Assembly: GCF_964188315.1 (NCBI RefSeq) | Contig: NC_135673.1 | Coordinates: 2,108,001 to 2,172,000 of the forward strand | Length of the DNA stretch: 64,000 nt | Reading direction: 5' to 3' | From: Podarcis muralis | Taxonomy: Eukaryota | Shown here: piece after piece, positions 46,975-49,290 of the stretch | Layout of the letters: each line of letters opens with the position of its first letter | How positions within the stretch are numbered: position 1 is the first letter of the stretch | The notes under the pieces: generated by a model | Database searches by the model: none | Seen by the model: the letters and a program-made list of their open reading frames with translations, nothing else | What the model was told of the DNA's origin: nothing | Translations under genes and position numbers: made by a program

Positions 46975-47595
46975 TGGGAGGTGGGGAGGGTTTGTAGAGC
47001 AGGTTTGGGAAACCCCCAGCCCACCAGGTGAGGGGTTTTCCACATCACCCTGCGAGGCTGTTTCCCACAGACCACGCCCACTTGCCCATCTGCCGAAATC
47101 ACTGGTTGACATCAGTGGGTGGGTGGGAGCGCCTGGTACAATTCTGCTAGGTGCTGCTTTGCAAAGTAGACCCCAAATGTTGACAAAAGTGGGACCACCC
47201 AACCATCTGTCAGCAGCCATCAAAATGCACAGTTGGCCCGTGAAGTGGGGGGAGGTAAAGATCTGGCCCACTGAGCCAAAGGAGTTCTCCATCTCTATAA
47301 TCATAATAATAATAATTTATTATTTATACCCTGCCCATCTGGCTGGGCTTCCCCAGCCACTCTGGGCGGTTTCCAAAAAGATATATTAAAATACTGTAAT
47401 ACTGCATCTCTAGTGTGCAGCAAGGTCAGCTCCTTTGCAAGTATAGAGGTCAGCCTCTCTTTTGGATCTCAACCCTACAAGATGGGTGTTTAGATGTAGC
47501 ACAACATTTCCGCTGGTGATGTTCATGGAGGCTTGTTGGAGAACCAGTTGCCCATCCGAGATGAGAACATCCTATACACAAACAGGAAATGGAAC

Positions 47596-47971
47596 TAAGT
47601 TAGTTCTTGGTATGAGCTTTCGTGTGCATGCACACTTCTTCAGATACACTGAAACAGAAGTTGCCAGATCCTTCTATATATTGAGAAGGTGGGGAGGGGT
47701 ATTACTCAGAAGGGTGGTGGGAATGGGTGATTTGCAGATAGCTGTGATGAGCCTCTGCCAATCACCCATTCCCACCACCCTTCTGAGTAATACCCCTCCC
47801 CACCTTCTCAATATATAGAAGGATCTGGCAACTTCTGTTTCAGTGTATCTGAAGAAGTGTGCATGCACACGAAAGCTCATACCAAGAACTAACTTAGTTG
47901 GTCTTTAAGGTGCTACTGGAAGGAATTTTTTTTGTTTTGACTATGCCAGACCAACACGGCTACCTATCTGT
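47596..47971 (+). mobile_element. Penelope-like element terminus with an inverted partial copy, 15-bp TSD
   Basis: TSD AACAGGAAATGGAAC (47581-47595 / 47972-47986); 140-bp perfect inverted repeat; 3' part TTGGTCTTTAAGGTGCTACTGG...CAGACCAACACGGCTACC resembles recalled reptile PLE ends. Confidence 0.8.
47845..47882 (+). ncRNA. Minimal type I hammerhead ribozyme motif (mirror copy on minus strand 47610-47647)
   Basis: GTAT-CTGAAGA-A-GTGTGCATGCACAC-GAAA-GCTC-ATAC: helix I GUAU/AUAC, conserved core, palindromic helix II, AGCU helix III, predicted cleavage after CUC (47878). Confidence 0.75.
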
Positions 47972-49290
47972 AACAGGAAATGGAACAAAATTCATCTCCC
48001 CCCCCCCATCCCTTTCCGGGAGTGGGGGGTGAGTTGTCAAGGGATGAACAGATGTGTGGGGTGAAGAAAAAAACTTTAGGGGACTTATTTTACTTTTGCA
48101 CAGCACTTAGTTTTTTCGGTTGCTGGTGGTGATTATGATGTTGTTATTATTATTATTAATTACAATTGCTATTATTATTATTACTAGTAGTAGTACTTTT
48201 TGCAAGACGACTTGAGCCCAAATCTTGAAAGAAAAATTAAGTCTTGGACCGCTGGTGTTTTAGTGGAGGCAACTGTGAATTAAATATTTAATGGGTTGTT
48301 ACTGATTTCTCTCATGGCAGGAAAACTGTGCAGCTGCAACGAATGCTGTTGGATTTTGTGTTTGCATGGAGCAGAGACACCACTTTCACGCTTTATCTTT
48401 TGTTGTTTCTTAAAAGAAGATTACAGCTTAATGTTTCTCTTAGAAGCTAGAACTTTTAACTGGGGGAGGCAAGTGGCAGTCAGGAGGACCAATCAGACGC
48501 CCAAGAGTGTGATTGTAACCAGATCAGTTTCAGCTGAAGATTTTGCTCTGCTGCTTCTGGCTGAAACATGTGGACTGGTTTGGTGTGTGTTGGTGCTGGC
48601 ACGTTCCGCTCAGTGAACAGGTTAGGTTATCTCTATATGATATATTCATTTTCTTGTGGATTTCCTAAGTGCTGTTTAATTCTTTGATGAAAATAGGCCT
48701 CAGAGGTCTGGTATTTAAGGATGGTGGTGAAAAAGACCAGAAATTTATGGCACTGTTGTTTCTTTAGACCATTTGTTACTCTGGCTTACCTTTGTATGTT
48801 GTGTCATAAAAAATAAGGTTATCTACAGCTTAAGTTCTCTCTCTTCCCCCTAGACTTTGTGGGCTATCGCATGTTGGGAGCACCTGGTGTTTGCAGCCAG
48901 TGAGGATGTTGTTAAATGGTGATTCTGGGTGTGGAGGGAAACACCCCCCCACCCATTTTAGGGGAAGTACAGTGGGCTACATCAGGGGTAGATTATCTGA
49001 CTTGCATGCAGAAGGTCCCAGGTTCTAAACCCGATGGCATCTCCAGGGAGAGCTGAGAGACACTTGCTGCCTGAAATCCTTTACAGCTGCTGCCAGTCAG
49101 TGTAGACAGTATTCAGCTGCATGAACCTATGGTCTGACTTCCTATAACAGAAATTTTGCCCTCCTCACAGGGTGCTTGAGTGTGCTGCAAAGCATAGTGC
49201 TGGTGGGACCCAAGTCACCCACAATCTTAATTTTATGAGAGGCAGCTTGGTGTGAGAGGGCTGGGCACTGAGTCTTTTCAGTACAGTACA

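What the first reader, a model, noticed from the sequence alone, without database searches (positions are those of the whole stretch)
47581..47986. Hammerhead-bearing 140-bp perfect hairpin inserted in the probable ZBTB6 3'UTR
Seen: a 376-bp insertion with a 15-bp TSD about 620 nt after the ZBTB6 stop; arms 47593-47732 and 47760-47899 are 100% complementary around a 27-nt centre. Each arm holds a minimal hammerhead motif, one per strand. The first canonical AATAAA I find after the stop is at 50076 (an ATTAAA at 47385 could end the mRNA earlier), so the structure is probably in the mRNA. Established: PLE insertions often have inverted truncated copies and hammerheads, and long dsRNA in UTRs is an ADAR/Dicer/Staufen substrate. 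Inference: this is a very young insertion giving the mRNA two competing folds, a long duplex that masks the ribozyme or a self-cleaving fold, and so a possible retroelement-born RNA stability switch or endo-siRNA source. It may equally be a neutral recent insertion.
Basis: partly seen in the sequence, partly recalled or inferred. Interest (0 to 1): 0.85.

Follow-up and report, generated by a model that had tools for sequence, protein, structure and literature searches.

The report
Young Penelope-type hairpin insertion, ZBTB6 3'UTR
This is a recent, not yet fixed insertion of a very abundant lizard retroelement fragment that folded back on itself when it integrated into the ZBTB6 3'UTR; its small ribozyme motif is real, but it is buried in a 146-bp duplex and almost certainly inert there, so the finding is ordinary.

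Summary
A 376-bp insert (47596-47971) lies between two copies of a 15-bp target duplication, 621 nt after the ZBTB6 stop. It has 146-nt arms with one mismatch around a 15-nt centre. Each strand carries one complete minimal hammerhead motif, which Rfam does not detect but which 200 shuffles never produced.

The anatomy matches what is published for Penelope-like elements: a constant 3' end without poly(A), 5' truncation, an adjacent inverted copy and a variable-length duplication. The family is very abundant.

The insertion is young. Another individual of the same species carries the exact empty site. So do Podarcis raffonei, P. lilfordi and Lacerta agilis. L. agilis holds a separate fold-back copy of the family with a different turn point.

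Stranded RNA-seq covers the plus strand from the coding sequence to about 50.8 kb, ending at a conserved AATAAA at 50796. The site is therefore inside a roughly 3.85-kb 3'UTR.

The "competing folds" switch is not supported. The ribozyme fold is worth 7-10 kcal/mol, and freeing it from the duplex costs about 115 kcal/mol. These ribozymes also need a second sense copy, which the mRNA lacks. An incidental double-stranded-RNA effect remains untested.

The scan has already noted the same kind of Penelope/hammerhead hairpin at many other places in this genome.

The parts
45688..46974 (+). ZBTB6 coding sequence (428 aa, BTB domain plus C2H2 fingers), stop at 46972-46974
   Evidence: ORF. Pfam finds BTB and zf-C2H2. 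The protein is 89% identical to Rhineura ZBTB6 and only 46% to ZBTB26. Gene start placed by the L006 match.
46975..50820 (+). Inferred ZBTB6 3'UTR, about 3.85 kb; the 3' end is approximate
   Evidence: Stranded RNA reads of X23 (first mate on the minus strand only) cover the unique bins at 0.2-4x from the coding sequence to 50837 and drop to 0 from 50838 on.
47581..47595 (.). Left copy of the 15-bp target-site duplication AACAGGAAATGGAAC
   Evidence: The 15-mer is single at the empty sites L003:7892 and L004:7885.
47596..47738 (-). Inverted copy of the element (left arm). The repeat reaches 47593 because 3 nt (AAC) are shared with the target.
   Evidence: One mismatch at 47733.
47610..47647 (-). 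Minimal hammerhead motif on the minus strand; antisense within the ZBTB6 mRNA
   Evidence: Descriptor hit with core start at 47643 on the minus strand.
47739..47753 (.). 15-nt centre (loop) of the fold-back, TAGCTGTGATGAGCC
47754..47899 (+). Direct copy of the element (right arm), same sense as ZBTB6
   Evidence: It shares the private variant 47811A / 47681T with the left arm, where the family reads show C/G (table 3).
47845..47882 (+). Minimal type-I hammerhead motif, sense in the mRNA; predicted cleavage between 47878 and 47879
   Evidence: Its traits match the published description in PMC4209133.
47900..47971 (+). 72-nt 3' tail of the element, present at one end only; the 3' terminus ...CGGCTACCTATCTGT is constant across copies and has no poly(A)
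   Evidence: 131 RNA reads from other copies diverge just behind 47974 (table 7). The Lacerta copy has the same end.
47972..47986 (.). Right copy of the target-site duplication
50796..50801 (+). AATAAA, the probable poly(A) signal in use
   Evidence: It is conserved, with its surroundings, in P. raffonei, P. lilfordi and L. agilis. RNA coverage stops just after it.

Best explanation
This is a recent, still polymorphic insertion of a 5'-truncated terminal fragment of a very abundant lacertid retroelement family of the Penelope-like kind. The family may be an autonomous PLE or a PLE-mobilised non-autonomous derivative. Reverse transcription started at the constant 3' end (47971) and ran back to about 47739-47754. 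The product then turned back on itself (snap-back or template switch) and copied 146 nt again in the opposite sense. It was joined to the target through a 3-nt microhomology, leaving a 15-bp duplication. The hairpin is therefore a by-product of integration. The two hammerhead motifs are the family's own ribozyme, present once per arm. In ZBTB6 mRNA from the insertion allele the element is transcribed as part of the 3'UTR and forms a 146-bp duplex. The single sense hammerhead is locked in that duplex and has no second sense copy to dimerise with, so it should not cleave. The most likely net effect on the gene is none or slightly harmful. Shown here: the anatomy, the duplication, the empty alleles, the family abundance, the fold-back in another copy, and the 3'UTR location. 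Inferred: the snap-back mechanism, the PLE parentage and the inertness of the ribozyme.
For: Anatomy and duplication.
Exact empty site in another individual of the same species: X12 contig record 2 joins 47580 directly to 47972 (table 8).
Exact empty site in P. raffonei and P. lilfordi, and absence of the insertion in L. agilis.
Filled allele seen independently: X2 contigs cross both junctions, with an inverted left end and a direct right end.
Family abundance: summed contig depth of 1e5-5e5 over the insert against about 8 on unique flanks in X12; 94% of the laid RNA reads continue into unlike sequence.
Both arms share a private variant against the family (47811/47681), so they come from one template.
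A second, independent fold-back copy exists at L005:786-983. It has an 11-nt duplication, the same 3' end and a different turn point, and the window has the empty site at 38998-39010.
Many other fold-back junctions of family copies appear in X12 (table 5).
[quoted passage not shown] Pairs of such motifs on opposite strands 100-700 bp apart are already described (PMC4209133).
An inverted 5'-truncated copy next to PLE insertions is a published hallmark (PMC8557442).
Energetics.
3'UTR location.
Against: No full-length family member with a reverse transcriptase and GIY-YIG endonuclease ORF could be fetched, so PLE parentage rests on anatomy and the ribozyme type. A 33-aa frame overlapping the hammerhead found no PLE protein. 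Rfam hammerhead models do not recognise the motif. It is unknown whether the animal of the one confirmed RNA run (X23) carries the insertion; X2, which does, is only guessed to be RNA. No data on editing, small RNAs or allele-specific expression were obtained, so a cis effect of the duplex is not excluded.
Confidence: 0.8

Rival explanations
1. The insertion allele has a real but incidental cis effect. The 146-bp perfect duplex in the 3'UTR is edited by ADAR and lowers export, translation or stability, or is diced into small RNAs. That would make it a segregating expression variant of ZBTB6.
For: The site is inside the transcribed 3'UTR. The duplex is long and nearly perfect. Inverted Alu pairs in human 3'UTRs are edited and can reduce export or translation (PMC4378195, PMC3458544, PMC526178).
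Against: No editing, small-RNA or allele-specific data exist. The family-wide differences seen in the arms are transversions, not A>G (table 3). The effects of inverted Alu pairs are variable and often small (PMC3458544, abstract).
Confidence: 0.25
2. It is a retroelement-born RNA switch. The mRNA alternates between the long duplex and a self-cleaving hammerhead fold, and this tunes ZBTB6 stability.
For: The catalytic core is complete, and the motif is in sense orientation within the mRNA's right arm.
Against: The ribozyme fold is worth -7 to -10 kcal/mol, z = -0.44. Freeing it costs about 115 kcal/mol. The left arm is transcribed first, so the duplex zips up before the ribozyme is made. Helix III is only the palindrome AGCU, so a dimer of two sense copies is needed; single minimal hammerheads showed no cleavage in vitro (PMC4209133). 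The insertion is polymorphic and absent from sister species.
Confidence: 0.02
3. The element is not PLE-related. It could be a SINE-like element moved by a LINE, or a fold-back or MITE-type DNA transposon.
For: No RT/GIY-YIG relative was recovered, and the fragment has no supported coding frame.
Against: The duplication length differs between copies (15 vs 11 nt). The ends are asymmetric, with a tail at one end only. The 3' end is constant while the inner and outer limits of the inverted part vary. These features argue against a DNA transposon. The lack of a poly(A) or simple-repeat tail, together with a PLE-type minimal hammerhead, argues against a LINE-dependent SINE.
Confidence: 0.1
4. The inversion is an assembly artefact.
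For: Perfect palindromes are a known source of assembly errors, and PLE structures are said to trouble assemblies (PMC8557442).
Against: In a run from a different study (X2), the unique left flank continues into inverted element sequence (contig 47340-47622). The direct 3' tail continues into the right flank (contig 47947-50114). The duplication is exact. Other copies are fold-backs too.
Confidence: 0.02

Closest known systems
Minimal hammerheads in the terminal repeats of Penelope-like elements (Cervera & de la Pena 2014, PMC4209133)
   Same: Type-I motif with a complete core, an extra nucleotide between A9 and G10.1, the G10.1-C11.1 pair, a short (4-bp) helix I and helix III reduced to a palindrome (AGCU). 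It is massively dispersed, mostly as single motifs on truncated copies, with some pairs on opposite strands 100-700 bp apart. Here the two cores are 206 bp apart.
   Different: This is a lacertid family not named in that paper, which mentions only turtles and snakes among reptiles. Helix II is 5 bp with a 4-nt loop, not 7-8 bp. No activity was tested.
PLE insertion architecture: 5'-truncated copy with an adjacent inverted 5'-truncated copy and a one-sided tail (Evgen'ev & Arkhipova 2005; Craig et al. 2021, PMC8557442)
   Same: An inverted copy directly upstream of a 5'-truncated direct copy, an extension at one end only, a target duplication, and no poly(A).
   Different: The fragment is only 233 nt of direct copy, with no ORF or tandem pseudo-LTR. 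The one-sided stretch here is 72 nt of element sequence, not the 30-40-bp tail described.
Animal non-LTR retrozymes (Cervera & de la Pena 2020, PMC7229834; Li et al. 2026, bioRxiv 10.64898/2026.07.22.740005)
   Same: Small non-coding elements bearing hammerheads and related to PLE terminal repeats. In Xenopus, exon-overlapping copies tend to sit in 3'UTRs.
   Different: There is no head-to-tail tandem, so two sense ribozymes that could excise a circular RNA are absent.
Inverted Alu pairs in human 3'UTRs
   Same: Retroelement-derived intramolecular dsRNA in a 3'UTR, so the expected handling by ADAR, Staufen and paraspeckle proteins is the same kind.
   Different: Here one insertion event makes both arms, the duplex is perfect and shorter (146 bp vs about 300 bp imperfect), the host is a lizard, and no editing or retention data exist.

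Membership tests
Penelope-like element (terminal fragment or PLE-mobilised derivative) | Minimal type-I hammerhead with the PLE traits: extra nucleotide between 9 and 10.1, G10.1-C11.1 pair, palindromic 15.2-16.2, short helix I | tested here: met
   Read by hand. Descriptor scan: 2 hits in the window, 0 in 200 shuffles. Traits as listed in PMC4209133.
Penelope-like element (terminal fragment or PLE-mobilised derivative) | 5'-truncated insertion with an adjacent inverted 5'-truncated copy | tested here: met
   Also seen in the independent copy L005:786-983. Described as typical in PMC8557442.
Penelope-like element (terminal fragment or PLE-mobilised derivative) | Target-site duplication of variable length and a constant 3' end without poly(A) | tested here: met
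   15 nt here and 11 nt in the L. agilis copy. Both end ...CGGCTACC(T/C)A(T/C)CTGT.
Penelope-like element (terminal fragment or PLE-mobilised derivative) | Full-length relatives encode a telomerase-like RT and a GIY-YIG endonuclease | tested here: inconclusive
   No such ORF in the window. The 33-aa frame across the hammerhead gave only an unrelated weak hit. Collection scans returned nothing relevant. Lizard genomes cannot be searched by DNA with these tools.
Rfam hammerhead families (RF00163, RF00008, RF02275-RF02277) | Covariance-model match at or near the gathering score | tested here: not met
   No hammerhead match at E<=10 on 1001 nt or on 151 nt. This is expected for a motif without a closed helix III.
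Non-LTR retrozyme | Two or more head-to-tail units, each with a sense hammerhead | tested here: not met
   One direct and one inverted copy; no direct repeat of the unit.
Fold-back or MITE DNA transposon | Symmetric terminal inverted repeats reaching both ends and a fixed duplication length | tested here: not met
   A 72-nt tail at one end only. Duplication of 15 vs 11 nt, and variable turn points.
microRNA precursor | Match to a curated family at gathering score | tested here: not met
   All miRNA matches score 15-57 bits against gathering scores of 52-105, on both strands. This is generic hairpin noise.
3'UTR inverted-repeat dsRNA element (IRAlu-like, by function) | An inverted repeat inside a transcribed 3'UTR, with A-to-I editing, nuclear retention or translational effect | tested here: inconclusive
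   The 3'UTR location is supported. Editing and retention could not be tested: the reads in the arms come from the whole family, and the genotype of the confirmed RNA run's animal is unknown.

The most novel reading that the evidence does not exclude
The palindromic helix II of the family's hammerhead (GTGTGCATGCACAC) may also act at the DNA level. It could be a preferred snap-back or self-priming point for the nascent cDNA, which would explain why PLE insertions so often carry an inverted 5'-truncated copy. The L. agilis copy turns exactly in this palindrome. The ten best-supported fold-back junctions of other copies in X12 all fall within about 15 nt of it (table 5). This ZBTB6 copy, however, turned about 100 nt further upstream, and the clustered junctions could equally be one propagated subfamily.
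Probability: 0.15. Interest if true: 0.5.

Novelty: new member of a known kind. Interest (0 to 1): 0.2.

Why it matters
Taken alone it matters little. It is one more copy of an abundant retroelement family whose ribozyme and inverted-copy architecture are already published. Two modest uses remain.

First, the filled and empty alleles both segregate in one species. Heterozygous lizards therefore offer a clean natural test of what a perfect 146-bp duplex does to an mRNA in a non-mammalian vertebrate.

Second, dated fold-back copies with different turn points could help work out the still undefined integration mechanism of Penelope-like elements.

Tried and rejected
- **Rfam searches:** cmscan on 1001 nt and on 151 nt gave no hammerhead, only sub-threshold miRNA-hairpin noise.
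- **Other copies in the window:** blastn found none.
- **Public collection scans:** exact scans of metagenome and viral collections for the hammerhead found nothing. The tail 20-mer gave two chance bacterial matches.
- **Coding link:** the 33-aa frame ending at TAA 47890, tested as a possible PLE ORF C-terminus against 1.84 billion proteins, gave one unrelated weak hit. That hit is an LDL-receptor/CarboxypepD_reg-type protein. The coding link to a PLE ORF suggested by other first-reader notes is therefore not supported for this copy.
- **RT or GIY-YIG ORF in the window:** none found. The ORFs of 180 aa or more are ZBTB6, a ZBTB26-like gene and ORFs with no Pfam match.
- **Species B:** the X28 contigs did not bridge the site, so they say nothing on presence or absence.
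- **Earlier findings by sequence:** the search was blank.
- **Read-end pile-ups at 47611-47613:** considered as evidence of ribozyme cleavage and rejected. They occur on both read orientations, are 1-3 nt off the predicted site, and nearly all reads there are partial alignments from other copies.

Full report
**What is in the sequence**

Window 47581-47986 holds a 376-bp insert (47596-47971) between two copies of AACAGGAAATGGAAC. Inside it, 47593-47738 and 47754-47899 are 146-nt inverted arms with one mismatch (47733) around a 15-nt centre. A 72-nt tail (47900-47971) is present at the right end only. As RNA the region folds at -305.6 kcal/mol, z = -32.5.

**The gene**

The ORF ending at 46974 is ZBTB6. 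It has a BTB domain and C2H2 fingers. It is 89% identical to Rhineura ZBTB6 and 46% to ZBTB26. A ZBTB26-like ORF lies upstream at 33683-35026.

Proteins at least 90% identical come from Zootoca, Lacerta and three Podarcis species. The genome is therefore a lacertid. Its own record is OZ076968.1 of GCA_964188315.1. The insert starts 621 nt after the stop.

**The hammerhead**

On the plus strand of the right arm the motif reads as follows:
- helix I: GUAU (47845-48) paired with AUAC (47879-82)
- core: CUGAAGA (47849-55), then an extra A (47856)
- helix II: GUGUG-CAUG-CACAC (47857-70)
- GAAA (47871-74), then G, C, U, C
- predicted cleavage between 47878 and 47879

All conserved core positions are present. 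The mirror image lies on the minus strand of the left arm.

A descriptor requiring the core, helix II, GAAA, a palindromic helix III, UH and a 4-bp helix I finds only these two sites in 128 kb. It finds none in 200 dinucleotide shuffles. Rfam's hammerhead models give nothing even at E<=10; the miRNA matches are generic hairpin noise below gathering scores.

The deviations from the canonical motif are the ones published for minimal hammerheads of Penelope-like elements. [quoted passage not shown] The same paper reports undetectable cleavage of single motifs, low cleavage of dimers, and pairs of motifs on opposite strands 100-700 bp apart (PMC4209133).

**How old it is, and whether it is real**

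Four runs were laid on 45600-51400.
- **Empty allele, same species:** in X12, a DNA-sized run from another individual of the same species label, a 1128-nt contig at single-copy depth joins 47580 directly to 47972. This is the exact empty site with one copy of the 15-mer.
- **Filled allele, independent study:** in X2, one contig runs from the unique left flank 27 nt into inverted element sequence (47340-47622). Another runs from the direct tail into the right flank (47947-50114). The filled allele and its inverted-left, direct-right layout are thus seen independently of the assembly.
- **Related species:** the orthologous loci of P. raffonei (L003) and P. lilfordi (L004) carry the exact empty site. 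L. agilis (L005) lacks the insertion too.

The insertion is lineage-specific and still polymorphic.

**What family it belongs to**

Summed contig depth over the insert is 1e5-5e5 in X12, against about 8 on unique flanks. 94% of the laid RNA reads run on into unlike sequence. 131 RNA reads diverge just behind 47974, which marks a shared 3' end.

Against the family reads, this copy has private letters at 47811 (A, where the family has C) and at the paired 47681 (T, where the family has G). Both arms therefore come from one template molecule (table 3).

L. agilis carries a separate copy about 5 kb upstream of its ZBTB6 (L005:786-983). It has an 11-nt duplication, the same 3' end and a fold-back whose turn lies inside the helix II palindrome. 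The window has the empty site for that copy at 38998-39010. Many other fold-back junctions of family copies appear in X12 (table 5).

These features point to a target-primed retroelement rather than a DNA transposon: a constant 3' end, variable 5' limits, variable duplication length, no poly(A), and an adjacent inverted 5'-truncated copy. The inverted copy and the one-sided extension are published hallmarks of Penelope-like elements (PMC8557442).

I could not obtain a full-length relative with RT and GIY-YIG domains. A 33-aa frame across the ribozyme matched no PLE protein. Collection scans were empty or chance matches. PLE parentage is therefore well supported by anatomy but not proven.

**Is it in the mRNA?**

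X23 is a stranded RNA-seq run kept as raw reads. On unique bins only first-mate-on-minus reads occur, which means plus-strand RNA. Depth is 0.8-3.6x over the coding sequence and 0.2-4.1x downstream as far as 50837. It is zero from 50838 onwards.

AATAAA at 50796 and its surroundings are conserved in all three other lacertids. AATAAA at 50076 sits at the edge of a very high-copy SINE (50062-50449). ATTAAA at 47385 lies in a roughly 107-bp repeat absent from L. agilis.

The insertion site therefore lies inside a 3'UTR of about 3.85 kb. Whether the X23 animal carries the insertion is unknown. X2 does carry it, at even depth across coding sequence, junctions and UTR, but its RNA status is only a guess by the tool.

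**How it most likely works**

- The minus strand of the insert reads as one continuous snap-back product: cDNA from 47971 back to about 47739, followed by a copy of itself from 47754 to 47899.
- The single mismatch, 5 bp from the loop, and the AAC microhomology at the outer junction fit a template switch and end-joining. This mechanism is inferred, not shown.
- In the mRNA the left arm is transcribed first, so the duplex zips up outward from the loop.
- The isolated hammerhead fold is worth only -6.8 to -9.9 kcal/mol, z = -0.44. Freeing 47841-47886 from the duplex costs about 115 kcal/mol.
- Only one of the two motifs is in sense orientation, so the dimer these ribozymes need cannot form within the molecule.

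A ribozyme-versus-duplex switch is therefore not credible. A 146-bp perfect duplex is in principle a substrate for ADAR and other dsRNA-binding proteins. Inverted Alu pairs in human 3'UTRs are the comparison (PMC4378195, PMC3458544, PMC526178). Nothing here tests that.

**Comparison with what is known, and verdict**

This is a new instance, in a lacertid family not specifically described, of a known kind. The hammerhead type, the opposed pairs, the inverted truncated copy and even the tendency of exon-overlapping copies to lie in 3'UTRs are all published. The last point comes from Xenopus (bioRxiv 10.64898/2026.07.22.740005).

The scan has noted the same kind of insertion at many other places in this genome. 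109 notes hold both "hammerhead" and "Penelope". One follow-up reached the same conclusion for a copy in a V2R intron. Interest is low.

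Noticed in passing
L005:786-983 (Lacerta agilis, about 5 kb upstream of its ZBTB6); empty site in the window at 38998-39010: An independent fold-back copy of the same family. It has an 11-nt duplication CTCCAGAGTTT, and its turn lies exactly in the hammerhead helix II palindrome. 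Its inverted arm reaches into the tail. The copy is absent from the window genome.
   Followed up: yes
window 47621-47648 joined to 47841-47862 (table 5): The ten best-supported fold-back junctions of other family copies in run X12 all cluster around the helix II palindrome GTGTGCATGCACAC. This could be a snap-back hot spot or one propagated back-to-back subfamily.
   Followed up: partly
window 47611-47613: RNA read alignments of X23 begin or end here in both orientations. The place mirrors the predicted cleavage site 47878/47879, offset by 1-3 nt. They are most likely boundaries of partial alignments from other copies, not cleavage products.
   Followed up: partly
window 50062-50449: A very high-copy SINE, with summed depth in the millions in X12. 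The loose ends of reads from other copies (GGGGATTCGAACC...) suggest it is tRNA-derived.
   Followed up: partly
window 47152-47404: Another high-copy repeat lies just upstream of the insertion. The stretch 47298-47404 (about 107 bp, holding ATTAAA at 47385) is present in the Podarcis loci but absent from L. agilis, and it has other copies in L003 and L004.
   Followed up: partly
window 48898-49285: A moderately repeated stretch in the 3'UTR (depth about 1000 in X12), with variable junctions at 49022-49086.
   Followed up: no
window 33683-35026 (+): A second ORF with a BTB domain and C2H2 fingers (447 aa) lies upstream on the same strand. It is most likely ZBTB26, which fits the conserved ZBTB26-ZBTB6 neighbourhood.
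   Followed up: partly
window 47455: The X12 empty-site haplotype carries an 18-nt insertion (TATACTTTCTTTTGGATT) and several SNPs relative to the window. These could serve as linked markers for allele-specific work.
   Followed up: no
window 39830-40013: Another first-reader note (s1-193718) reports a 110-bp perfect palindrome in (TA)n here. I did not examine it.
   Followed up: no
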